DNA of 64,000 nt from Octopus sinensis (taxonomy: Eukaryota). The position numbers were made by a program, and so were the translations under genes. The notes under the pieces are model-generated. The model saw only the letters and a program-made list of their open reading frames with translations. It did not search any database and was not told the origin of the DNA. Below, in pieces: positions 1,212 through 61,681 of this stretch (the stretch's first letter is position 1; each line of letters begins with the position of its first letter). The stretch lies in contig NC_043013.1 in NCBI RefSeq assembly GCF_006345805.1, positions 37,014,001-37,078,000 on the forward strand, given 5' to 3'.

Positions 1212-2704
1212 CCAGGTTGGTGCGAAGCTAATGGCCGACATTTTTAGAAAATATTTTTAGAAAGTATTTTATTAAAATGTGCATCTTGCAATGTTTTAAG
1301 AATGTCACAATGAGTAAATTATACATTTTTTTTTCAGATTCTGACTGTATTGGCCATAATCCTCTGCTATATTCGCATCCATGTTCTTCCCCAAAATAGA
1401 TCAAATTAAATATGTCTTTCTCTATGAATTTCATAAAGGCGTCAATGCAAGCACAGCAGCAAAGTCTCTTCGGAGAGATTATGGGGATGATGTAGTAAGT
1501 GAAAGAAGTTGCAGGAGATGGTTTACTCGTGTCAGAAGTGAGTTTGAGAGACGAGTCAAAAAAAGGTCGTTCAAAGTAACTTGCTTCCGAAGAGTTGGAC
1601 ACTTATCAAGAAAATATAACCACTATTTGTAGAGAACTCGCAGAATGTGTTTAAGGTAGCCGATACGATTATTCTACGCCAACTGAAAACTCGGAAAAAT
1701 TTCAGTGGCAGGAAAATGGGTCCTACACGAACTGTCTCCAGAGAATCTGCAACTGCACGTTGTCTGTGGTCAGACATTGCTTTCACGACACCTTAAGGAA
1801 CCATTTTTAGGATGATGAGAAGTGGATCATTTACCATAACGTCAAACGCTGCCGATCGTGGATCAGTCGAGGAGGAAGATCTATTCAACAACTAAGAGGA
1901 GGACGTCATCCAAAGAAAACCTTGTTGAGTCTATGGTTCGATATTGAAGGATATATATATTTCTTTACTACACACAAGGGGCTAAGTACAGAGGGGACAA
2001 GCAAGGATAGACAAACGGATTAAGTCGATTACATCGACCCCAGTGCGTAACTGGTACTTAACTTATCGATCCCGAAAGGAGGAAAAGCAAAGTCGACCTC
2101 GGCGGAATTTGAACTCAGAACTTAACGGCAGACGAATTACGGCTACGCATTTCGCCCGGCATGCTAATGTTTCTGCCAGCTCGCCGCCTTCGATATTCAA
2201 GGATATAGTCTATTACGAAATGTTAAACAACAATCACACAATCACTTCTAATCTCTACTGTGATCAACTTCATCTATCTGAAAAGAAAGTGACCCTGCTT
2301 AATCAACAGAGAGGGTGTCATCTTCCACCATGATAATGCTCGTTTCACACAGCCTGATTGACAAAAGATTTCTTGGAAGCGCTTGGTTGGGAAATATAGC
2401 TTCATCCCCCATATTCCTCAGACCCTGTTCTTTCTGATTAGCACTTGTTTCGGGGACTACAAAACCATTGGAACGGTCTTCGACAGACATCAAGGGAAGA
2501 GGCTGTAACTGAGTTGGATTAATATTTCGCATCAAACACTAAACAATTCTAAAATGGTGGGATTTATAAGCTTGATGACAGATGGAATGTTGTTCAAGAA
2601 GGCAAAGGGAAATTAATATTAATGGATTAATATTGTCTTAATCATGGGCGTTTTCATTTTTAATAGAGGCCTTAAAAGCAGTCATTACTTTTGCTCCAAC
2701 CTGA
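1212..2704 (+). mobile_element. Decayed mariner (Hsmar1/SETMAR-like) DNA transposon with TIRs and transposase pseudogene
   Basis: TIRs TA|CCAGGTTGGTGCGAAGCTAATG and CATTACTTTTGCTCCAACCTGA|TA. Translated fragments QIKYVFLYEFHKGVNASTAAK...ERSCRRWF, DEKWIIYHNVKR, HDNAR and PYSSDP..D.HLF, with frameshifts and stops. Confidence 0.9.
1956..2188 (-). mobile_element. Full-length SINE family A inserted in the mariner transposase
   Basis: Complete reverse-strand copy. 19-bp TSD TTCGATATT(G/C)AAGGATATA at 1937-1955 and 2189-2207, one mismatch. Confidence 0.9.
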
Positions 2705-4401: not shown

Positions 4402-4454
<53 letters not shown>

Positions 4455-4895
4455 AAGATAAATGCGATACAATAAAATTAATTATAATCGCCGGTGTACC
4501 AGTACACGCCATATTTATACATATATCATTACATTCAAGGCGAAGAGTGCACTAGATACACAATAGCTGGATAAATTTAGTGAGATGAAAATTAAAAACT
4601 TTTACAAACTTAACTTTTCTTATACTGCAGTTTCGCCAAATTCAGTAATAAAAATAGTATTTATTTACTCAGGCTGGCTCTTCAGTAAGATTCCTGTTAA
4701 TGATGGGAGGACCATATCAATAGACCCATGTGCGTCTATCGAAATGCTCTTTCTAAACTATTCAAAACACTGCGCAGACTCAGAACAAACCCGACAAAAT
4801 AGGGGGTTGTGGTATATCGTCTAACGGTCAGAAATTTATCGAGAGAATATGTAAGCAAAGATAAATGCGATACAATAAAATTAATTATAATCGCC
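4455..4895 (-). mobile_element. Retrozyme-like element: 403-bp unit plus 38-bp terminal direct repeat, carrying a hammerhead ribozyme
   Basis: AAGATAAATGCGATACAATAAAATTAATTATAATCGCC at 4455-4492 and 4858-4895. Flanking ATATACC at 4448-4454 and 4896-4902 (candidate TSD). HHR inside. Confidence 0.7.
4618..4690 (-). ncRNA. Type I hammerhead ribozyme with long stem II
   Basis: Minus strand reads UCUUA-CUGAAGA-GCCA..(36 nt)..UGGC-GAAA-C-UGCA-GUA-UAAGA. Stems I, II and III all pair; predicted cleavage between 4623 and 4622. Confidence 0.8.
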
Positions 4896-4918
4896 ATATA
4901 CCTATATATATATATATA

Positions 4919-24689: not shown

Positions 24690-25699
24690 CAAACAACATC
24701 GATAATAAATAGCATGTTCCTGGCCGTCACAGAACTAATAGCCACAGAAACAAATGTTAATATGACCAGGTTAGATAATACAATATATGCAGCAGCCTCT
24801 GTGACCACAAACGAAGCAGGATACCACCTCAAACTCATCCAAACAGGAGTATCACTACCCAAACAAACCTAATAGACAAATAATATCGAGAAAAATAGAA
24901 AATAAAAGGAATGATCTGTCAATCCTTAATGGAACTAGAAGACAATCGATACTACTAATAAACAAATATACTACGTAAATACAAAATTACAAAACAAGGT
25001 ATACCTGAAATTTAAGAACAACTAAAGCAAGATATCCTCGCCAAAGCACAAAGAATCCGCCGGTATGAGAAACGCCAGCTTTTCTTTGAACAAAACAAAC
25101 ATTTCATCTCCAACGAAAAAGATTCTGCGAAGAACTTGGCAAAGATAACGTACAAATCAATGCAACAACAACAGTAGAAGAGAAAGATTTTGGAAAGAAA
25201 TATAGTCGGCGAAGGAACAACCTCAGAAATGATCTATCAAAACAACAAACTCAGCAACTGAACAACACTGGACTCCTATAACAACGGAAGAGGTCACCTA
25301 GTCACTGCAAAAATTAAGCAACTCGATGGCACATGGTTACGACAATATCCCCAACTTCTGGTTAAAATATCTAACCTAAATACATAAAAGGCTAGCTGAG
25401 AAATTTAATGAAATACTAACAATGCCAGAGAAAATACCAGAATGGCCCACTGAAGGGAAAACTATTCTAGTTCCCAAATCCATTGAAACTACAATTTATA
25501 AAGCCTTTACTGCAATAAAATCGCAGGGAATGATCAAGCATCTGGAAGAAAACAACCGGTTTCCGGAAGAGCAGAAGGGATGCTGCAAGGGTTTATACGG
25601 CTGTAAAGACCAGCTACTGGTCAACAATGCCATAACTGGAGACAAGCGTAGAACGAAGGATCTAAGTAAGGCTTGGATCGATTATCGAAAGGCTTTTGT
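24690..25699 (+). mobile_element. R4/Dong-like LINE: N-terminal region and start of RT, pseudogenised
   Basis: AKAQRIRRYEKRQ, PEWPTEGKTILVPK and HLEENNRFPEEQKGCCKGLYGCKDQLLVN...AWIDYRKAF are RT motifs of RLE-bearing LINEs. Confidence 0.85.
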
Positions 25700-26254
25700 A
25701 TTTGTATGCACGTGACGTGCTTTTATCTTTCTCTTCTCAACGCTCGATTTTCTTGTGTCCAGCATTTCACAACGTCTTGACTTAACAGCCCTCACCGTCT
25801 GTTTTTACTGTTTTGTTCTCACTGTCCTGTTTTGGTTACGACTTTCACCCTCTGCAAAAAATCCCAAGTTTTATTTAATTTTATTTGCGGGAAGGACTGT
25901 TTTAATGAGGAGTAGATAACACAACGGACAACTGATGAAACGAATGTTCTTTATGTTACATGTCTCGTTTCTCTGATGTTCGCTTTTTTTCGTTCGAAAA
26001 ATTCATTTTTCTATATTTTTGTTTTTCCTGTTCTCATTTCGCATTCTGTCACGTTTCTTCGATATGCTGTATATATATGCATGTATATATACATATATAT
26101 GTAGGTATGTACATATATGTGTGTATATAGACGCCCTCTTTCACACATACTCTCTTACACACACGCGCAGCTTCGTTTTGGGATCACCACTACTTTGTTA
26201 TCTCCCCTACTTCTTCGCTCTCCTGTGTGATCCTTCTATCCGGCATTTGCCATG

Positions 26255-26903: not shown

Positions 26904-26991
26904 ATTTCTCTTATTGCGTAATTTTCTATCTTATTAGATCAGTAACTGTGTGTCTATATGAAAACTAAATAATCTAAGTGAGGCGTATACC

Positions 26992-27224
26992 TATTTCTTT
27001 ACTATCCACAAGGGGCTAAACACAGAGGGGACAAAGAAGGACAGACAAAGGGATTAAGTCGATTATATCGATCCCAGTGCGTAACCGGTACTTATTTAAT
27101 CGACCCCGAAAGGATGAAAGGCAAAGTCGACCTCGGCGGAATTTGAATGCAGAACGTAACGGCAGACGAAATGCGGCTAGGCATTTCGCCTGGCGTGCTA
27201 ACGTTTCTGCCAGCTCGCCGCCTT
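26992..27224 (-). mobile_element. Full-length SINE family A
   Basis: Perfect 15-bp TSD AGTGAGGCGTATACC at 26977-26991 and 27225-27239. Confidence 0.92.
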
Positions 27225-29784: not shown

Positions 29785-30125
29785 TAGTTTCAAGGTTCAT
29801 ACAAGGCTGGGACCACAGGCCATACATCCCCTACCCAATTCAGGATCACAGCATATAATTTGTTTTCCTCAACAAGCGCTGCCCTGTTTAACATTGTCCC
29901 GAAAGAGATCAAAGAAGAAAAGGATCCCATCACCTTTAAACGGAGTCTGGACATATTTCTTCAAGGAATACCGGAAAAGCCACCCATACCTGGTTACAAA
30001 TCACTCAACAGGTACTCGGTACTTGAATGCACCACAAACAAAAGTTGACTTAAGCGGTATTTAGATAATCTTATCAGGTGGTGCTATTAAGTTAGACATA
30101 GCCTGGACCAATCTTTCGTCGAAAC
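29785..30125 (+). mobile_element. CR1-clade LINE 3' end
   Basis: ALFNIVPKEIKEEKDPITFKRSLDIFLQGIPEKPPIPGYKSLN parallels GPQLFNILPK...LDLFLSGIPGEP at 44057-44293. Confidence 0.75.
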
Positions 30126-35743: not shown

Positions 35744-36401
35744 GTAATGATACATATATACATATACGTACGTACATAAAATACATGAATAAATGTATAT
35801 GTGTATGTGTATGTGCGTGTATACATAAGTACATTCATACATACGCGTACTACACGGATTATGAGTGATTTTATACACTTTTCGAATAATATGTTCAAGG
35901 AGATGAACTACATCGGTTTCTACTTTAGAAATAGTGTTTAGGTGTAAATTGCCCGAACCTTTAGACCTACATCGATTACATAACCAAACGAAGATGAAGC
36001 ACATCGATTATAGAATTGTTTTTCGAATTTTAAACATATTCAACATTTGACAAAGAAATATATATTGCTATGATGCACATTTTAAATTATGGATTGAAAT
36101 AGCGGTAGGATTTTACCAAGTTGCCCATTTTGAAAACCCAAATACGGCAATGATTCAAGAACGAAAGTGAATTTTTTCATAGGAATGTGTAATATGAAAC
36201 TCGAACAAAGGACGGTTTTACGTTATTTACTATAAATATTGTGTCTTTATATTAATAAATACGTCACGATGTGTTACCGCTACTGTATATAACTCACTTT
36301 GATATTTATCATTGTTTGATTTCACTTTTTCAATATCAGCGACAGTGGACGCTGGAAAAAGTATAAGTATTTGTGAAGGAAATCTAATTCTCGGCGACAA
36401 C

Positions 36402-36461
36402 TATGATTGTCACACGCTGACGAGAGGTCATACCTCGAAACTCGAGTCCGTGTGTATCATA
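36402..36461 (+). ncRNA. Type I hammerhead ribozyme (353-bp family, copy 1)
   Basis: CACACG-CUGACGA-GAGG-UCAUA-CCUC-GAAA-C-UCGA-GUC-CGUGUG; stem I extended by UAUGAU/AUCAUA; cleavage after 36448. Confidence 0.9.
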
Positions 36462-36752
36462 AGTTGAAGACGGAAGGATGACTTCCCTTTGCAAATACTG
36501 ACAGGACACAGATAGTGTGCCTATGGCCAGCTGGAGGAGTGTGTCCTCCTGGGGCTAAAAACTACAGTAGCATCCACCCTTAGGGGTTAGCCATATTGAA
36601 ATGGCAAAAATACGTCACGATGTGTTACCGCTACTGTATATAACTCACTTTGATATTTATCATTGTTTGATTTCACTTTTTCAATATCAGCGACAGTGGA
36701 CGCTGGAAAAAGTATAAGTATTTGTGAAGGAAATCTAATTCTCGGCGACAAC

Positions 36753-36813
36753 TATGATTGTCACACGCTGACGAGAGGTCAATACCTCGAAACTCGAGTC
36801 CGTGTGTATCATA
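36753..36813 (+). ncRNA. Type I hammerhead ribozyme (353-bp family, copy 2)
   Basis: Same fold with loop II UCAAUA; cleavage after 36800. Confidence 0.92.
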
Positions 36814-37105
36814 AGTTGAAGACGGGAAGGATGACTTCCCTTTGCAAATACTGACAGGACACAGATAGTGTGCCTATGGCCAGCTGGAGGAGTGTGTCCT
36901 CCTGGGGCTAAAAACTACAGTAGCATCCACCCTTAGGGGTTAGCCATATTGAAATGGCAAAAATACGTCACGATGTGTTACCGCTACTGTATATAACTCA
37001 CTTTGATATTTATCATTGTTTGATTTCACTTTTTCAATATCAGCGACAGTGGACGCTGGAAAAAGTATAAGTATTTGTGAAGGAAATCTAATTCTCGGCG
37101 ACAAC

Positions 37106-37166
37106 TATGATTGTCACACGCTGACGAGGGGTCAATACCTCGAAACTCGAGTCCGTGTGTATCATA
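37106..37166 (+). ncRNA. Type I hammerhead ribozyme (353-bp family, copy 3)
   Basis: Stem II GGGG/CCUC (A to G change giving a G-U wobble); cleavage after 37153. Confidence 0.9.
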
Positions 37167-37567
37167 AGTTGAAGACGGGAAGGATGACTTCCCTTTGCAA
37201 ATACTGACAGGACACAGACAGTGTGCCTATGGCCAGCTGGAGGAGTGTGTCCTCCTGGGGCTAAAAACTACAGTAGCATCCACCCTTAGGGGTTAGCCAT
37301 ATTGAAATGGCAAAAATACGTCACGATATTAATAAATACTTATATATCTACATGTTCATAGGAATGCGTAAACATTTCTCCCTCCCTCAATATAAATATA
37401 TATAGATATATATAAAATAAATATAAGAGAGTGGTCACTATATGGCTCACTCTAGCACCAGTTAATCCAAAAGGTTTCCAACCACAAAAATACTGTTTCC
37501 CATGAAAGCCAGTACGATTGTTAGCTCACACGGACAGGGCAATAAAAAATAACAAAAATACAGATTA

Positions 37568-37649
37568 TTTTGGGACAATTGTTTCGCTATTAATGAATTA
37601 AATGTAATTTTACTTACAAAAAAAATCCACTTGTAGCTCCCAGCCAAAA
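37568..37649 (-). ncRNA. Hammerhead ribozyme, 530-bp family, core-mutant copy
   Basis: Same fold as the other two copies but CUGAGGA reads CUG-GGA (1-nt deletion or sequencing error). Confidence 0.6.
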
Positions 37650-38090
37650 CTATCTGGATGAAATCACACGCCAGATTTTACCATAACGATAAATACGCGT
37701 GTGGTTCAATTGATTACATCCGACGTTATAATTCAAATGCCCCAACTAACAGCGCGCCAAACTTTCACGGAAAACAAATACAGCATTTAGAAATAAATGC
37801 AGCATATTATAATTAATTAATAAGGGTGAGAGAATTAGATACTAATTTAATAGTATATCTATTCAACACCAAGTGGCCTAGTGCTCCGAGAAACCTGGAT
37901 TATTATAATATTTTATAATATATTATAATATTTTTACAAAATAAATAAGAGAGTGGTTACTATATGGCTCACTCTAGCACCAGTTAATCCAAAAGGTTTC
38001 AACCACAAAAATACATGTTTCCCATGAAAGCCAGTACGATTGTTAGCTCACACGGACAGGGCAAATAAAAAATAACAAAAATACAGATTA

Positions 38091-38170
38091 TTTGGGACAA
38101 TTGTTTCGCTATTAATGAATTAAATGTAATTTTACTTACAAAAAAATCCACTTGTAGCTCCTCAGCCAAA
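38091..38170 (-). ncRNA. Type I hammerhead ribozyme, 530-bp family
   Basis: Minus strand UUUGG-CUGAGGA-GCUA...UAGC-GAAA-C-AAUU-GUC-CCAAA. Confidence 0.85.
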
Positions 38171-38911
38171 ACTATCTGGATGAAATCCACTCAATCACAC
38201 GCCAGATTTTACCATACGATAAATACGCGTGTGGTTCAATTGATTACATCCGACGTTATAATTCAAATGTCCCAAATAACAGCGCGCCAAACTTTCACGG
38301 AAAACAAATACAGCATTTAGAAATAAATGCAGCATAATTATAATTAATTAATAAGGGTGAGAGATTAGATACTAATTTAATAGTATATCTATTCAACACC
38401 AAGTGGCCTAGTGCTCCGAGAAACTGGATTATTATAATATTTTATAATATATTATAATTATTTTTACAAAATAAATATAAGAGAGTGGTCACTATATGGC
38501 TCACTCTAGCACCAGTTAATCCAAAAGGTTTCAAGGTTTATTTTTGTGGTTGAAACCTTTTGGATTAACTGGTGCTAGAGTGAGCCATATAGTGACCACT
38601 CTCTTATATTTATTTTGTAAATATTATAATATATTATAAAAATTATAATAATCCAGGTTTCTCGGAGCACTAGGCCACTTGGTGTTGAATAGATATACTA
38701 TTAAATTAGTATCTAATTCTCTCACCCTTATTAATTAATTATAATTATGCTGCATTTATTTCTAAATGCTGTATTTGTTTTTCGTGAAAGTTTGGCGCGC
38801 TGTTAGTTGGGGCATTTGAATTATAACGTCGGATGTAATCAATTGAACCACACGCGTATTTATCGTTATGGTAAAATCTGGCGTGTGATTGAGTGGATTT
38901 CATCCAGATAG

Positions 38912-38994
38912 TTTTGGCTGAGGAGCTACAAGTGGATTTTTTTTGTAAGTAAAATTACATTTAATTCATTAATAGCGAAACAATTGTCCCAAAA
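38912..38994 (+). ncRNA. Type I hammerhead ribozyme, 530-bp family (inverted arm)
   Basis: UUUUGG-CUGAGGA-GCUA-(AGUGGAUU/AAUUCAUU and UGUAA/UUACA helices)-UAGC-GAAA-C-AAUU-GUC-CCAAAA; cleavage after 38988. Confidence 0.88.
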
Positions 38995-39394
38995 TAATCT
39001 GTATTTTGTTATTTTTTATTTGCCCTGTCCGTGTGAGCTAACAATCGTACTGGCTTTCATGGGAAACATGTATTTTGTGGTTGAAACCTTTTGGATTAAC
39101 TGGTGCTAGAGTGAGCCATATAGTGACCACTCTCTTATATTTATTTTGTAAAAATATTATAATATATTATAAAATATTATAATAATCCAGGTTTCTCGGA
39201 GCACTAGGCCACTTGGTGTTGAATAGATATACTATTAAATTAGTATCTAATTCTCTCACCCTTATTAATTAATTATAGATATATATATATACATATACAT
39301 ACACACACACGCACACACACACACGCACACACACATACACACACACATATATATATATATATACATAATATACCTACATGTGTATATATATATG

Positions 39395-39497
<103 letters not shown>

Positions 39498-40543
39498 GGA
39501 TAGATAGATAGATAGATAGAGAGAGAGATAGATAGATAGATAGATAGACAGACATATACATGTGTGTGTGTGTTTGTGTGTGATTATATAATGAAGACTA
39601 TGAATATTGAGACGTTCTTTTGATTCTGGGCGTTGATCGTAACACATGATGACAGAATACATACATCGAAAACGTCGTGTATTACGATCAAACTTCACAT
39701 GCTGTGATTGTAATGTAAAATTCTTAATATATTTTCAAACTATATAGCATTTACTTTGAATAAAGTCGGAGATTGTTCCTTTATTATCCGTGTTCTTCTG
39801 TATAAGACAATTTACATGATTCTGAAATTTCAGTTTTAACAATGAGATATAATTAAAATGACGATAAAACTAGAAATTTTTTGCGATGGAGTTAATGAGA
39901 GGTGACAATATGAATCCTACTTTCAATATAAATAACCATTGGTTGATAGTTGGACATAAGACCTATCTAAACGGTAAAACGAGAATACTATTGCGTAATA
40001 GAAGATGGCTTGTTACTCATCGAACAAATTCTCACCAGTTTGAATGCAATGTGCTGTGGAAAGCATTTGATGAACGTCTCGAAGTGTGGACTCTTCTCTA
40101 TTTCACTGAACATTTTGAGCACATTTTGATTCAACATAATCATATTCATCCGTAAACTGTGTCAAATATATATGAAAACTGAAAAACTCCTCTACAGGCG
40201 ATAGGTTAAAACGGCACAAAGTTATAGAAAATATTATGCCTTATAGTCAAAATTAATAGACATTAAATGAAAATGTTTACGTGATACTATAAAGTAATAA
40301 AGTATGCAAAATTTTAAGTTATGCTTCGCATTGAGTTTTAACACCACGCCACCAAAGAGTAAATACTATTATGTAGAAATGATGAGAAAAACGTTTGACC
40401 TCGCTCAAGAATTCAAATTATGAAGGGGTTTTGTTACAACTTCTGTGAACCGAAAGGAGGAAAATAGCGAACTTTTCTTCTCGAAAGAAACAGGGGAATA
40501 AAAAGGATATGTTACGTATATATTACAAATCATATAATACATA

Positions 40544-43967: not shown

Positions 43968-44375
43968 TGCCATAATATACATCTGGAAGATCCTAGATCG
44001 AGAGTTACACAAATGTCAGAACCGGGCGCCATTGCATAGTTCCAAGGACTCCAAATTTGCCATCAAGATGTAGGACGAGATACTGTGATTGCCTGGGCTT
44101 CCGAGGCCCACAGCTCTTCAATATCCTCCCGAAGAACCTAAGAGACCTGTATTGGGTGGATGCAGATGTCTTTAAAACAAAACTGGATCTCTTCTTATCA
44201 GGTATTCCAGGTGAACCAACTTCACGGCAGATGAGAGCAGCTCCATCGAACTCTCTCATGCACCAAATGACAGTTGCTAAAAAGCATTCGTGAAGTAAAA
44301 TCATGTAGCAACATCAAATGTCGGTGCCTAAGCATGGCCACAGCTTGTGAGCTGAAACTAGATAAAAACTAAAAA
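43968..44375 (+). mobile_element. CR1-clade LINE 3' end including 3' UTR
   Basis: IIYIWKIL, LGFRGPQLFNILPKNLRDL...FKTKLDLFLSGIPGEP..RAAPSNSL; tail CGGTGCCTAAGCATGGCCACAG..CTGAAAC. Confidence 0.85.
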
Positions 44376-51640: not shown

Positions 51641-52194
51641 TTTTGGGTTGTCCGCATCTTTACAGGAAAGAAAAAGGTCAATAAATACTTGCCATTACAT
51701 TTTTAATCAACCAAATATGAACCATTTTGTTGCACCATGCGTCTCCATTTTTCCTTTAACTTGAAAATACCCTCTTCCCAGAATTGAGTTTCGTGGCAAA
51801 GAATTCATCAAGGTATCTTTTTACGTCATCCAAGGAATTGAAATTTTTACCATTTAGACTATTCTGCAGAGACCCAAATAAATGGAAATCCGAAGGAGCA
51901 ATATCTAGTGAATATGGAGTGTTGGGTAACACATCCCAGTCGTGGTGCAGCAATATTTGTCTGGTTCCGAAACTATCAACTGTCGAAAATGAACGTTCTC
52001 ATCTTCCATTTTAAAGGGTTTCAAAATTAACACAGTTTATAGGAACATAAATCTTCTTCCACGAAGAGATAGCTAAAACTGTGCTCTAAATGGAGGAGCG
52101 GTGAAATCCTATTTTATGGACTCAATCATATTCTAAAATAAGTCGAAATGTAAGCTACTATAAATCGGCACGAACTTACCGACACAACGCAATA
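51641..52194 (-). mobile_element. Internally deleted mariner with both termini
   Basis: WDVLPNTPYSLDIAPSDFHLFGSLQNSLNG (YSPDLAPSD motif) fused close to the MEDENVHFR start; TIR-like TTGGGTTGTCCG at left and its inverse at 52160-52194. Confidence 0.85.
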
Positions 52195-59406: not shown

Positions 59407-59998
59407 TCGAGCTGGCAGAAACGTTAGCACGCCGGACGAAATGCTTGACGGTAATTCGTCTGCCGCTACGTTCTGAGTTCAAATTCCTCCGAGGTCGACT
59501 GTGCGTTTCATCCATTCGGGGTCGATTAAATAAGTACCAGTTACGCACTGGGGTCGATGTAATCGACTTAATCCGTTTGTCTGTCCTTGTTTGCCCCCTC
59601 TGTGTTTAGCCCCTTGTGGGTAGTAAAGAACTAGGTAATTCGTCTGCCGCTACGTTCTGAGTTCAAATTCCGCCGAGGTCGTCTTTGCCTTTCATCCTTT
59701 CGGGGTCGATGAAATAAGTACCAGTTACGCACTGGGTCGATATAATCTACTTAATCCGTTTGTCTGTCCTTGTTTATCCTCTCTGTGTTTAGACCCTTGC
59801 AGGTAGTAAAGAAATAGGTATTCCATCTGCCTTTATGTTCTGAGTTCAAATCCCGTCGATGTCGACTTTACCTTTCATCCTTTCGGGGTCGATAAATTAA
59901 GTACCAGTTACGCACTGGGGTCGATGTAATCAACTTAATCTCTTTTTCCTTGTTTGTTCCCTCTATGTTGAGCTCCTTATGGGCAATAAAGAAATAAG
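59407..59998 (+). mobile_element. Head-to-tail SINE family A trimer
   Basis: Copy 1 at 59407-59633; copies 2 (from 59634) and 3 (from 59817) both begin at GGTA(A)TT..TCTGCC. Confidence 0.9.
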
Positions 59999-60847: not shown

Positions 60848-61066
60848 GTATGTGGTTATATTTTCGTGTGTCGGTGTTTTGTCCCCTCAACTTTTGCTCA
60901 ACAACCGATGCTGGAGTTTTGCGTCCCCGTAACTTAACGGTTCAGCAAAAGAGACTGATAGAATAAGTACTAAGCTTACAAAGAATAAGTCCTGGCGTCG
61001 ATTTGCTCGACTAAAAAGCACTGCTCCAGCATGGCCACAGTCAAATAATTGAAACAAGTAACTGAG

Positions 61067-61067
<1 letters not shown>
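60641..61067 (+). mobile_element. Full-length SINE family B
   Basis: Head, CORE-like segment, internal (TA)n and tail all present. Confidence 0.88.
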
Positions 61068-61097
<30 letters not shown>

Positions 61098-61520
61098 AGC
61101 AAGTATTTTGCGTAGGATATGAGCAGTTCCCATGAGCACTATCTTCTGAATTTCTGCCATTCTTGGGTTTCCTGCTATCTGAGTTAGGTAGCAATCAGCC
61201 CCTTTTGCTATCATTCCCAGGGCACCTATGACAACAGGTATCGTTTTAGTCTTCAGGTTCCACATTTTGCTGATTTCTATTTCAAGATCTTTATATTTGC
61301 TCAGTTTTTGGTAGGTCTTGACAGATACGTTTATATCGATTGGGACAGTCATATCAGTGAGGAGGCATGTACTTTGTCTGAAGTCTTTCAATATGATGTC
61401 TGGCCTATTTGCATCTTTCTTTCTGTCAGTTTGAATGGTGAAGTCCCAGAGGAGTGAGATGTGGTCATTTTCAAGCACTGGAAATGGTTTGTGTTCCCAC
61501 CAGTGTTTTTCATGGGGCAA
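61098..61520 (-). mobile_element. R4/Dong-like LINE C-terminal fragment (restriction-like endonuclease) within (TAA)n
   Basis: Open frame LLWDFTIQTDRKKDANRPDIILKD..LLTDMTVP..KLSKYKDLEIEISKMW..PVVIGALG; TAA repeats on both sides. Confidence 0.9.
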
Positions 61521-61563
61521 ATTATTATTATTATTATTATTATTCTCATTATTATTATTATTA

Positions 61564-61681
<118 letters not shown>

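What the first reader, a model, noticed from the sequence alone, without database searches (positions are those of the whole stretch)
36249..37339. Young 3 x 353-bp hammerhead array with 14-bp TSD: candidate non-LTR retrozyme
Seen: three near-identical non-coding units (about four differences in total), each with a textbook type I HHR. Cleavage sites are 352 and 353 nt apart, and several further hairpins are present (GGAGGA/UCCUCC, GCCAU/AUGGC). The flanking ATATTAATAAATAC duplication has microhomology to the unit at both junctions. Established: HHR-bearing tandem repeats in other animals are processed to unit-length linear and circular RNAs. Inference: read-through transcription releases 353-nt monomers that circularise and reinsert using a borrowed reverse transcriptase.
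Basis: partly seen in the sequence, partly recalled or inferred. Interest (0 to 1): 0.92.

Follow-up and report, generated by a model that had tools for sequence, protein, structure and literature searches.

The report
Octopus hammerhead retrozyme, three-copy insertion
This is a young three-copy insertion of a 353-base non-coding repeat that carries a self-cutting hammerhead RNA motif, in what looks like an octopus genome; it is a clean new example of an already described class of small mobile elements (animal "non-LTR retrozymes") rather than a new kind of thing.

Summary
There are three 351-353-nt units at 36257-37327, with four differences in total. Each unit carries a type I hammerhead with an intact catalytic core. 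Cleavage sites lie 352 and 353 nt apart. An exact 14-bp duplication (ATATTAATAAATAC) flanks the array and shares 6 nt and 2 nt with the unit at the two junctions.

The window is probably octopus DNA.

New points:
- Helix III is only an 8-nt palindrome, and a two-unit transcript folds spontaneously into a double hammerhead, so processing probably needs tandem copies.
- The array is not phased on the cleavage site and has a 6-14-nt terminal redundancy, so its template was a circle or a multimer.
- The window holds two more, unrelated hammerhead repeat families. One is a 522-nt family lying 61 nt away, arranged head-to-head and also flanked by a 14-nt duplication. The other is a 403-nt single copy inside a (TA)n tract.
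- Tandem and inverted layouts plus TA-rich targets resemble Penelope-like element integration.

RNA expression, circularisation and genome-wide copy number could not be tested.

The parts
36249..36262 (.). Left copy of the 14-bp target-site duplication ATATTAATAAATAC. Its last 6 nt (AAATAC) are also unit sequence, i.e. junction microhomology.
36263..37325 (+). Family A insert: 1063 nt, made of three units (351, 353 and 353 nt) plus 6 nt. It begins and ends with GTCACG. Homology to the unit runs 36257-37327. The 5' end maps about 186 nt before the first cleavage site and the 3' end 172-174 nt after the last.
36411..36454 (+). Hammerhead 1. Loop 2 is shortened to UCAUA. Cleavage falls after C36448.
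36762..36806 (+). Hammerhead 2, the consensus copy: CACACG CUGACGA GAGG-UCAAUA-CCUC GAAA C-UCGA-G UC|CGUGUG. Cleavage falls after C36800.
37115..37159 (+). Hammerhead 3. Helix II has A>G, which keeps the pair as G.U. Cleavage falls after C37153.
36449..36800 (+). First predicted unit-length RNA (352 nt) released by cleavage at hammerheads 1 and 2.
   Evidence: for the sites; release is inferred
36801..37153 (+). Second predicted unit-length RNA (353 nt). As a circle its minimum energy is -114.5 kcal/mol, z = -5.6 against 200 dinucleotide shuffles, with 63% of bases paired. Helix I extends into a rod of about 18 bp with a 1x3 internal loop.
37326..37339 (.). Right copy of the 14-bp target-site duplication. 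Its first 2 nt (AT) are also unit sequence.
37415..38534 (-). Neighbouring family B, left arm: 2.15 tandem copies of an unrelated 522-nt unit. The hammerhead sense is on the minus strand. The hammerhead with cleavage after 38096 has an intact core (CUGAGGA). The copy with cleavage after 37574 has a deleted core base (CUGGGAG).
38539..39273 (+). Family B, right arm: 1.4 copies in the opposite orientation, 97.5% identical to the left arm. Its hammerhead lies at 38912-38994 (GUUUUGG CUGAGGA GCUA..43 nt..UAGC GAAA C-AAUU-G UC|CCAAAAU) and cleaves after 38988. The two arms meet 5'-to-5' at about 38536. The composite is flanked by TATAGATATATATA at 37401-37414 and 39274-39287.
4455..4895 (-). Family C: a single 403-nt unit plus a 38-nt terminal redundancy, inserted in a (TA)n tract. 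It is flanked by ATATACC at 4448-4454 and 4896-4902. Its hammerhead lies at 4617-4691 on the minus strand (UCUUA CUGAAGA GCCA..UGGC GAAA C-UGCA-G UA|UAAGA).

Best explanation
What it is. The array is a recent insertion of a non-autonomous, non-coding retroelement of the metazoan non-LTR retrozyme type, in an octopus-like genome.

Shown by the sequence:
- Three near-identical 353-nt units each carry a type I hammerhead with an intact core.
- An exact 14-bp target-site duplication flanks the array.
- The array ends are not at the ribozyme cleavage site, and they overlap by 6-14 nt of unit sequence.
- A two-unit transcript folds into a double hammerhead, in which the two ACUCGAGU helix III halves pair with each other.
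- The unit-length circle is unusually stable.

Inferred mechanism:
1. A source array is transcribed as a multimer.
2. [quoted passage not shown]
3. A host RNA ligase circularises these RNAs.
4. A reverse transcriptase with an endonuclease, supplied in trans, nicks an AT-rich target with a 14-bp stagger.
5. It primes on the circle, or on an uncut multimer, with 2-6 nt of microhomology, and copies a little more than three turns.
6. The cDNA is joined to the other target end through microhomology.

Likely helper. A Penelope-like element is the most likely helper, ahead of a LINE. The reasons are the tandem and head-to-head layouts of the three hammerhead families in this window, their TA-rich or (TA)n targets, and the absence of a poly(A) tail. 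This last step is the least certain.
For: Array, differences, hammerheads and duplication.

Non-coding: the longest ORFs are 63 aa or less, and the longest has no homologue among 5.8 billion proteins. There is no purine tract longer than 8 nt and no A run longer than 5.

Double hammerhead: the isolated 45-nt core prefers an inactive fold (-14.5 against -7.8 kcal/mol for the hammerhead fold). Two cores cofold into a double hammerhead at -33.9 kcal/mol. The unconstrained minimum-energy fold of the 441-nt stretch 36390-36830 pairs the two helix III palindromes over 8 bp, with helices I and II formed.

Circle stability: z = -5.6.

Permutation and terminal redundancy.

Two further hammerhead repeat families in the window:
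- My generic descriptor gives 6 hits, all with a palindromic helix III, against a mean of 0.11 hits and no palindromic hit in 100 shuffles.
- Rfam Hammerhead_1 independently aligns to family B (28.4 bits, E = 1.4e-5) and family C (21.2 bits, E = 0.003).
- Their insertions are also terminally redundant, not phased on the cleavage site, flanked by duplications and placed in TA-rich DNA.

Helix covariation: across six hammerhead families, 100% of 91 cells pair, 10 of 13 pairs show compensatory changes, and 0 of 500 shuffles reach the observed values.

Host: a LINE-like ORF at 61044-61604 is 78-91% identical to Octopus bimaculoides proteins.

Literature:
- The class definition and the circRNA model that yields tandem cDNA copies are in PMC7229834 and PMC7761336.
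- The retrozyme-PLE link is in bioRxiv 10.64898/2026.07.22.740005.
- Penelope-like insertions form partial tandems with an inverted 5'-truncated copy at the 5' end; the Naiad clade prefers (TA)n and occurs in Octopus spp. (PMC8557442).
- O. vulgaris has 31 recently active Penelope-like families (PMC13282606).
Against: - No RNA evidence of any kind is available here.
- No second copy of the 353-nt family exists in the 64-kb window. No octopus genome could be searched, and the exact hammerhead pattern found nothing in the metagenome or viral collections.
- All Rfam scores are below the gathering threshold.
- In isolation the monomeric hammerhead is predicted to misfold.
- The strand of the RNA template is ambiguous. 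The 6-of-6 (7-of-8) match at the left junction would suit priming on a minus-sense copy as well as 5'-end joining of a plus-sense cDNA.
- Three copies could have arisen after insertion by unequal crossing-over from an initial unit plus a few bases.
- No reverse transcriptase or GIY-YIG ORF lies in the window (which scanned 10 ORFs only). No sequence similarity to any Penelope-like element could be tested.
- The Naiad elements documented in Octopus spp. lack canonical hammerheads.
- The family B duplication is low-complexity sequence and occurs three times in the window.
Confidence: 0.7

Rival explanations
1. The element is the same, but the tandem layout does not come from rolling-circle copying of a circular RNA. 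Either the template was an uncleaved linear multimeric transcript primed internally, or the reverse transcriptase built the tandem by template jumping, as Penelope-like elements do when they make pseudo-LTRs.
For: Penelope-like insertions and their non-autonomous derivatives routinely form partial tandems and multicopy head-to-tail insertions from linear RNA (PMC8557442). The monomeric hammerhead is predicted to fold poorly, so uncut multimers should exist. Array ends that are not phased on the cleavage site fit this reading as well as a circle.
Against: In other animals the circular form is the most abundant retrozyme RNA (PMC7229834). The unit-length circle is unusually stable. All three units are near-identical, as expected from repeated copying of one molecule, though a homogeneous source array would give the same result.
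Confidence: 0.2
2. A shorter piece, about one unit plus a few bases, was inserted. The three copies arose later at this site by unequal crossing-over or replication slippage, so the copy number says nothing about the template.
For: Unequal exchange between tandem copies preserves the outer ends and the flanking duplication. Family C shows that insertions of 1.09 units occur in this genome. Published surveys report monomers, dimers and multimers for one family.
Against: Even the minimal starting insert must have exceeded one unit, so a circular or multimeric template is still required. The near-identity of the units does not discriminate between the two readings.
Confidence: 0.15
3. The spread was DNA-mediated. 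A piece of extrachromosomal circular or rolling-circle-amplified satellite DNA was captured at a staggered double-strand break by microhomology-mediated end joining, with no reverse transcription.
For: There is microhomology at both junctions, 6 nt and 2 nt. There is no poly(A) tail. The insert is terminally redundant.
Against: A clean 14-bp duplication indicates two nicks 14 bp apart, the usual footprint of endonuclease-initiated, target-primed insertion. Family B has the 5'-to-5' inverted layout expected from priming at both target ends. A conserved, structurally intact ribozyme in three unrelated families points to selection at the RNA level.
Confidence: 0.08
4. The array is part of the pseudo-LTR of an autonomous Penelope-like element, or an assembly artefact that inflates the copy number.
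For: Type I hammerheads occur in the pseudo-LTRs of Penelope-like elements. Tandem and inverted repeats are prone to misassembly.
Against: No ORF longer than 63 aa lies in the array, and no RT or endonuclease domain was found in the window ORFs scanned. The units are contiguous and directly bounded by the duplication. The units differ at four positions, so they are not a simple collapse or expansion of identical reads.
Confidence: 0.05

Closest known systems
Metazoan non-LTR retrozymes (Cervera and de la Peña 2020, PMC7229834), for example the Mytilus galloprovincialis Mg353 repeat
   Same: - Tandem non-coding units of 170-400 bp, each with a type I hammerhead.
- Low GC.
- Target-site duplications longer than 4 bp.
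- A predicted highly paired circular RNA.
- The mussel unit is also exactly 353 nt, and its hammerhead likewise has an 8-nt palindromic helix III (ACGCGCGU).
   Different: - There is no sequence similarity to the mussel unit outside the hammerhead core (local alignment z about 0).
- No cephalopod member is described in the papers I could search.
- Expression as circular RNA is shown for coral, mussel and axolotl but not here.
Amphibian retrozymes and newt satellite 2 hammerheads, the seed-like consensus of Rfam RF00163
   Same: Helix III is weak, and the motif is expected to work as a dimer (double hammerhead) in tandem transcripts. Loop 2 ends in AAUA as in the Rfam consensus.
   Different: The amphibian families reach up to about 120,000 copies in the axolotl genome. 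Here there is a three-copy array with a clean insertion footprint. The Rfam score falls below the family's gathering threshold.
Penelope-like elements and their non-autonomous derivatives
   Same: - Type I hammerheads.
- Partial tandem, head-to-tail insertions.
- An inverted copy joined at the 5' end (family B).
- Variable target-site duplication length (7 and 14 bp).
- Preference for TA-rich or (TA)n targets.
   Different: - No RT or GIY-YIG ORF is present.
- No 30-40-bp 'tail' extension was seen.
- Similarity to a pseudo-LTR could not be tested.
- The hammerheads of Penelope-like elements are usually minimal variants, whereas the family A motif has full-length helices I and II.
Plant LTR retrozymes (PMC4918200)
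   Same: Both are non-autonomous, non-coding, hammerhead-processed elements thought to spread through circular RNA.
   Different: The plant elements have type III hammerheads inside LTRs of about 350 bp, a tRNA-Met primer-binding site, a polypurine tract, 4-bp duplications and a Ty3/gypsy helper. None of these is present here.

Membership tests
Hammerhead ribozyme, type I (Rfam RF00163) | Conserved catalytic core: CUGANGA, GAAA, and a cleavage triplet NUH with the A15.1-U16.1 pair | tested here: met
   All three copies read CUGACGA ... GAAA ... GUC|.
Hammerhead ribozyme, type I (Rfam RF00163) | Three helices around the core, with helix I open (the 5' and 3' ends lie in helix I) | tested here: met
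   Helix I is CACACG/CGUGUG, helix II is GAGG/CCUC and helix III is ACUCGAGU. The Rfam alignment marks no non-standard pair. Helices covary across six families. That test is partly circular, because my descriptor required helices I and II.
Hammerhead ribozyme, type I (Rfam RF00163) | Score at or above Rfam's gathering threshold (34 bits) | tested here: not met
   Scores are 26.9-32.2 bits, and nothing is reported at the gathering threshold. The shortfall lies in helix II and loop 2, which differ from the newt-like consensus, and not in the core.
Hammerhead ribozyme, type I (Rfam RF00163) | Self-cleavage activity | not testable with these tools
   Only folding predictions are available. The monomer core is predicted to misfold, while a dimer forms a double hammerhead.
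Metazoan non-LTR retrozyme | Tandem repeats of about 150-450 bp with a type I hammerhead in every unit | tested here: met
   3.0 copies of 353 bp, each with a hammerhead.
Metazoan non-LTR retrozyme | No LTR, primer-binding site, polypurine tract or coding capacity | tested here: met
   ORFs are 63 aa or shorter, and the longest has no homologue. The longest purine run is 8 nt. There are no terminal repeats other than the units themselves. A primer-binding site was not searched for explicitly.
Metazoan non-LTR retrozyme | GC below 50% and, when present, a target-site duplication longer than 4 bp | tested here: met
   GC is 43%. The duplication is an exact 14 bp.
Metazoan non-LTR retrozyme | The unit-length circular RNA is predicted to be stable and highly self-paired | tested here: met
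   -114.5 kcal/mol, z = -5.6, 63% of bases paired.
Metazoan non-LTR retrozyme | Expressed as unit-length linear and circular RNA | not testable with these tools
   No transcriptome data are available.
Metazoan non-LTR retrozyme | Multiple dispersed copies in the genome | tested here: inconclusive
   No second family A copy exists in the 64 kb, and no cephalopod genome could be searched. Two other hammerhead repeat families do occur in the window.
Metazoan non-LTR retrozyme | Co-occurrence with Penelope-like elements in the host genome | not tested
   Literature only. Naiad elements occur in Octopus spp., and O. vulgaris has 31 recently active Penelope-like families. None was found in this window.
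Plant LTR retrozyme | Type III hammerheads within LTRs, a primer-binding site, a polypurine tract and a 4-bp duplication | tested here: not met
   The hammerhead is type I, there are no LTRs, and the duplication is 14 bp.
Autonomous Penelope-like element | An ORF with reverse transcriptase and GIY-YIG endonuclease between the repeated ends | tested here: not met
   The array has no ORF longer than 63 aa. Pfam found only a mariner HTH domain among 10 window ORFs.

The most novel reading that the evidence does not exclude
The three insertions in this window would be locus-level footprints of how animal retrozymes integrate. Family A shows more than three turns of a circle, with 2-nt and 6-nt junction microhomology and a 14-bp stagger. 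Family B shows two arrays primed from both target ends and joined 5'-to-5', also with a 14-nt duplication. Family C shows 1.09 turns inserted in (TA)n. Read together, they would indicate target-primed, partly twin-primed rolling-circle reverse transcription by a Penelope-like GIY-YIG/RT enzyme that prefers TA-rich DNA. That would extend the retrozyme-Penelope link, so far argued from vertebrate pseudo-LTR similarity, to cephalopods. It would also give a sequence signature by which the helper could be identified genome-wide.
Probability: 0.3. Interest if true: 0.55.

Novelty: new member of a known kind. Interest (0 to 1): 0.4.

Why it matters
Animal retrozymes are abundant sources of small circular RNAs. 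How they integrate, and which element mobilises them, remains unsettled. The published descriptions state that the repeats show no conserved motif that reveals the helper.

A very young insertion with intact junctions is the kind of copy from which the integration mechanism can be read. This one has an exact 14-bp duplication, microhomology at both ends and a permuted, terminally redundant array. It also has two neighbours from other families.

The window shows as well that default Rfam annotation misses all three octopus hammerhead families, because they score below the gathering threshold and two carry long helix II inserts. Retrozymes are therefore probably under-counted in cephalopod repeat annotations. 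The recent O. vulgaris repeat paper does not mention them.

Beyond that, the finding confirms a known class in one more animal group and does not open a new question.

Tried and rejected
- Related copies outside the window: the exact family A hammerhead pattern gave 0 hits in metagenome contigs and in viral contigs.
- A looser pattern (CTGAYGAG...CGAAACTCGAGTC) found 18 metagenome loci. These are other type I hammerhead families that share only the core and the helix III palindrome, with no similarity to the octopus unit. I used them only for the covariation test.
- Homology with the mussel Mg353 retrozyme, which has the same 353-nt length: rejected, because there is no similarity outside the hammerhead.
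- A helper enzyme nearby: Pfam on 10 ORFs found only a mariner HTH domain. The LINE-like fragments in the window are degraded.
- A default Rfam scan of the whole window reports nothing. An E-value scan of 37340-39800 returned only spurious microRNA hits on the family B palindrome and missed its hammerheads.
- Chance as the origin of the flanking duplication: identical 14-mers at a given spacing occur at about 2e-4 per position in this window, but essentially all are microsatellites, and this non-periodic 14-mer has a composition-based expectation of 0.006 per window.
- A tandem duplication of the flank as the origin of the 14-mer: rejected, because a second copy would have to be 1077 nt long rather than 14.
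- A whole-window repeat finder was swamped by microsatellites and was of little use.
Full report
**1. The observation**

The region 36257-37327 is a tandem array of period 353 with 3.0 copies and 99% matches. Aligning the three units shows exactly four differences:
- unit 1 lacks one A in hammerhead loop 2;
- unit 1 lacks one G further on;
- unit 3 has A>G in helix II, turning an A-U pair into G.U;
- unit 3 has one T>C.

A hammerhead-shaped pattern occurs three times in the 64-kb window, only here, against 0.03 expected and none of 100 shuffles with three. Rfam's type I hammerhead model aligns end to end to each copy with no non-standard pair, at 26.9-32.2 bits and E-values from 9e-6 to 5e-4 in a 1.4-kb search. 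These scores are below the family's gathering score of 34, so a default scan of the window reports nothing.

The cleavage sites, after GUC, are at 36448, 36800 and 37153, that is 352 and 353 nt apart.

The 14-mer ATATTAATAAATAC occurs exactly twice in the window, at 36249-36262 and 37326-37339, abutting the array. It is not a microsatellite, and its composition-based expectation is 0.006 copies per window. Its last six bases (AAATAC) and first two (AT) are also unit sequence.

**2. Anatomy of the ribozyme**

The motif reads CACACG CUGACGA GAGG-UCAAUA-CCUC GAAA C-UCGA-G UC|CGUGUG. The core is canonical. Helix II has 4 bp and a 6-nt loop that ends in AAUA, like the Rfam consensus. Helix I continues beyond a 1x3 internal loop into a rod of about 18 bp.

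Helix III is the weak point. It is either 2 bp closing a UCGA loop or, read differently, the 8-nt palindrome ACUCGAGU. Folding gives three results:
- On its own, the 45-nt core prefers an inactive fold, at -14.5 kcal/mol against -7.8 for the hammerhead fold.
- Two cores cofold into a double hammerhead at -33.9 kcal/mol.
- The unconstrained minimum-energy structure of a 441-nt transcript spanning two neighbouring motifs pairs the two palindromes with each other over 8 bp, with both helices I and II formed.

This is the behaviour described for amphibian retrozymes and many type I hammerheads, where a weak helix III allows cleavage as a dimer but not as a monomer (PMC7761336). Tandem copies are therefore probably a functional requirement, and 'textbook' is a slight overstatement.

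**3. The unit as RNA**

The unit is non-coding. Its ORFs are 63 aa or shorter, and the longest has no homologue among 5.8 billion proteins. As a circle, the 353-nt RNA has a minimum free energy of -114.5 kcal/mol, z = -5.6 against dinucleotide shuffles, with 63% of bases paired. GC content is 43%.

**4. The insertion footprint**

Between the two 14-mers lie 1063 nt: three units plus 6 nt. The insert begins and ends with GTCACG. If the microhomologies are counted, the terminal redundancy is 14 nt. The 5' end maps about 186 nt before the first cleavage site, and the 3' end 172-174 nt after the last.

The template was therefore not a ribozyme-cleaved linear monomer primed at its end. It was longer than one unit, either circular or multimeric.

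A 14-bp duplication implies two nicks 14 bp apart. If the hammerhead-sense RNA was the template, the events would run as follows:
1. The bottom-strand 3' end (...TTAATAT-3') primed on the AU of CACGAUGUG.
2. Synthesis ran a little more than three turns.
3. The cDNA end was joined to the top-strand end ...AAATAC-3' through 6 nt (7 of 8) of homology.

The reverse assignment, with priming by the 6-nt match on a complementary RNA, cannot be excluded. There is no poly(A) tail.

**5. Host and age**

A LINE-like ORF at 61044-61604 is 78-91% identical to Octopus bimaculoides proteins. The window is 34% GC and extremely rich in TA, CA and CTAT microsatellites. It is therefore probably from an octopus.

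The octopus literature calibrates a Jukes-Cantor distance of 0.09 as about 25 million years (PMC13282606). With two to four differences in 1063 nt, the insertion would be roughly 0.5-1 million years old. This is an order-of-magnitude estimate, and it assumes the units were identical when inserted.

**6. The surroundings: two more hammerhead families**

The neighbouring 522-nt repeat (family B) turned up in a self-BLAST of the flanks.
- It starts 61 nt to the right of the family A duplication.
- It forms 2.15 direct copies (37415-38534) followed by 1.4 inverted copies (38539-39273). The arms are 97.5% identical to each other, and the two direct copies are 95.6% identical.

A generic hammerhead descriptor of my own then found motifs in family B and one more elsewhere. 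The descriptor requires the core, helix II of at least 3 bp and helix I of at least 4 bp. It gave six hits in the window, all with an 8-nt palindromic helix III. Shuffled windows gave a mean of 0.11 hits and none with a palindrome in 100 shuffles.

Family B hammerheads:
- The motif is GUUUUGG CUGAGGA GCUA..43 nt..UAGC GAAA C-AAUU-G UC|CCAAAAU.
- It lies on the minus strand in the left arm and on the plus strand in the right arm. One left-arm copy has lost a core base.
- The two arms therefore meet 5'-to-5' at about 38536, with their 3' ends at the flanks.
- TATAGATATATATA occurs at both flanks, at 37401-37414 and 39274-39287. It is low-complexity sequence and occurs three times in the window.

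Family C (4455-4895, minus strand):
- It is one 403-nt unit plus a 38-nt terminal redundancy.
- It is inserted in a (TA)n tract and flanked by ATATACC.
- Its hammerhead has helix III ACUGCAGU.

Supporting tests for families B and C:
- Rfam's model, given short slices, independently aligns to B (28.4 bits, E = 1.4e-5) and to C (21.2 bits, E = 0.003).
- The three families share no sequence outside the core.
- I excerpted the helices of six families: A, B and C, two from metagenomes, and the mussel Mg353 clone from the supplement of PMC7229834. Every one of 91 cells pairs, 10 of 13 pairs show compensatory changes, and no shuffle reaches the observed values. This test is partly circular, because the descriptor required helices I and II. 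The palindromic helix III was not required.
- The 3' ends of the four arrays map 172-174/353, 285/522, 159/522 and 168/403 nt after the cleavage site. None is phased on it.

**7. Mechanism**

The best-supported reading is the published retrozyme cycle:
1. Multimeric transcription.
2. Hammerhead cleavage, here as dimers.
3. Circularisation by a host ligase.
4. Reverse transcription of the circle into tandem cDNA by an enzyme supplied in trans, followed by integration (PMC7229834; PMC7761336).

The sequence shows the ribozyme, the tandem units, the duplication, the permutation and the terminal redundancy. Transcription, circularisation, the identity of the template strand and the helper are inferred.

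For the helper, the footprints resemble Penelope-like elements more than poly(A)-dependent LINEs:
- head-to-tail multicopy insertions;
- an inverted copy joined at the 5' end;
- variable duplication length;
- TA-rich or (TA)n targets.

These are the features described for Penelope-like elements, and the (TA)n preference is described for the Naiad clade that occurs in Octopus spp. (PMC8557442). O. vulgaris has 31 recently active Penelope-like families. A 2026 preprint derives vertebrate non-LTR retrozymes from Penelope-like pseudo-LTRs.

Against this, Naiads lack canonical hammerheads, no helper ORF lies in the window, and I could not compare the units with any Penelope-like sequence.

The rival readings are given with the report: template jumping on linear multimers, copy-number change after insertion, DNA-mediated capture, and artefact. 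The first two modify the mechanism rather than the identity of the element.

**8. Comparison with what is known, and novelty**

All sequence-testable defining features of metazoan non-LTR retrozymes are met. Expression and genome-wide dispersal could not be tested. The Rfam gathering score is not reached.

The closest described relative by host is the mussel retrozyme. It is also 353 nt long and also has a palindromic helix III, but shows no sequence similarity. I found no description of cephalopod retrozymes in the searchable literature.

This is a new member of a known kind. Its value is as a clean, young integration footprint with two informative neighbours, and as a reminder that default ribozyme annotation misses these families.

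**9. Limits**

- No eukaryotic genome collection was available, so copy number, target preferences and empty sites remain untested.
- Folding results are thermodynamic predictions.
- The age estimate is rough.
- The family B duplication is low-complexity sequence.

Noticed in passing
window 37401-39287: A second, unrelated hammerhead-bearing repeat (522-nt unit) lies 61 nt from the reported array. It has 2.15 copies on one strand and 1.4 on the other, joined 5'-to-5' around 38536. It has two intact type I hammerheads and one dead one, with a 43-nt insert in helix II and helix III ACAAUUGU. TATAGATATATATA flanks it on both sides. The predicted circle has z = -4.8.
   Followed up: yes
window 4448-4902: A third hammerhead element: a single 403-nt unit with a 38-nt terminal redundancy, on the minus strand, inside a (TA)n microsatellite and flanked by ATATACC. 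Its hammerhead lies at 4617-4691 with cleavage triplet GUA and helix III ACUGCAGU. The predicted circle is not unusually stable (z = -1.2), so the copy may be older or decayed.
   Followed up: yes
window 36176-36192 and 37355-37371: A 17-nt imperfect direct repeat, TTCATAGGAATG[T/C]GTAA, occurs only twice in the window. In the reconstructed empty site the two copies lie about 102 nt apart and bracket the retrozyme target. They may be the duplication of an older insertion of about 85 nt.
   Followed up: partly
window 59450-59940: A tandem of 2.7 copies of a 183-nt unit (89% matches). It overlaps a dispersed SINE-like repeat of about 230 nt that is also present at 1958-2183, 26988-27217 and 59408-59637.
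   Followed up: no
loci L001-L018 (metagenome contigs, mostly Ga0126336): Eighteen contigs carry type I hammerheads with the same ACUCGAGU helix III but different helices I and II. L001 has two copies 662 nt apart. They are presumably from animal DNA in host-associated samples and are unrelated to the octopus units outside the core.
   Followed up: partly
window 1360-1629 (+), 51759-51998 (-), 25380-25712 (+), 29788-30045 (+), 43997-44290 (+), 61044-61604 (-): Degraded transposon fragments. The first has a mariner/Mos1 HTH domain (Pfam PF17906). The second looks like the C-terminal part of a mariner transposase. The others look like pieces of LINE reverse transcriptase or its C-terminal region. 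The last is 78-91% identical to Octopus bimaculoides proteins.
   Followed up: partly
protein P0030 (hit of window 61044-61604): A UniRef entry labelled Escherichia coli is 80% identical to this octopus LINE-like fragment. It is probably contamination or a mislabelled record.
   Followed up: no
window 36801-37153 compared with the mussel Mg353 clone (supplement of PMC7229834): The octopus and mussel retrozyme units are both exactly 353 nt long, yet share no sequence outside the hammerhead. The equal length appears to be coincidence.
   Followed up: yes
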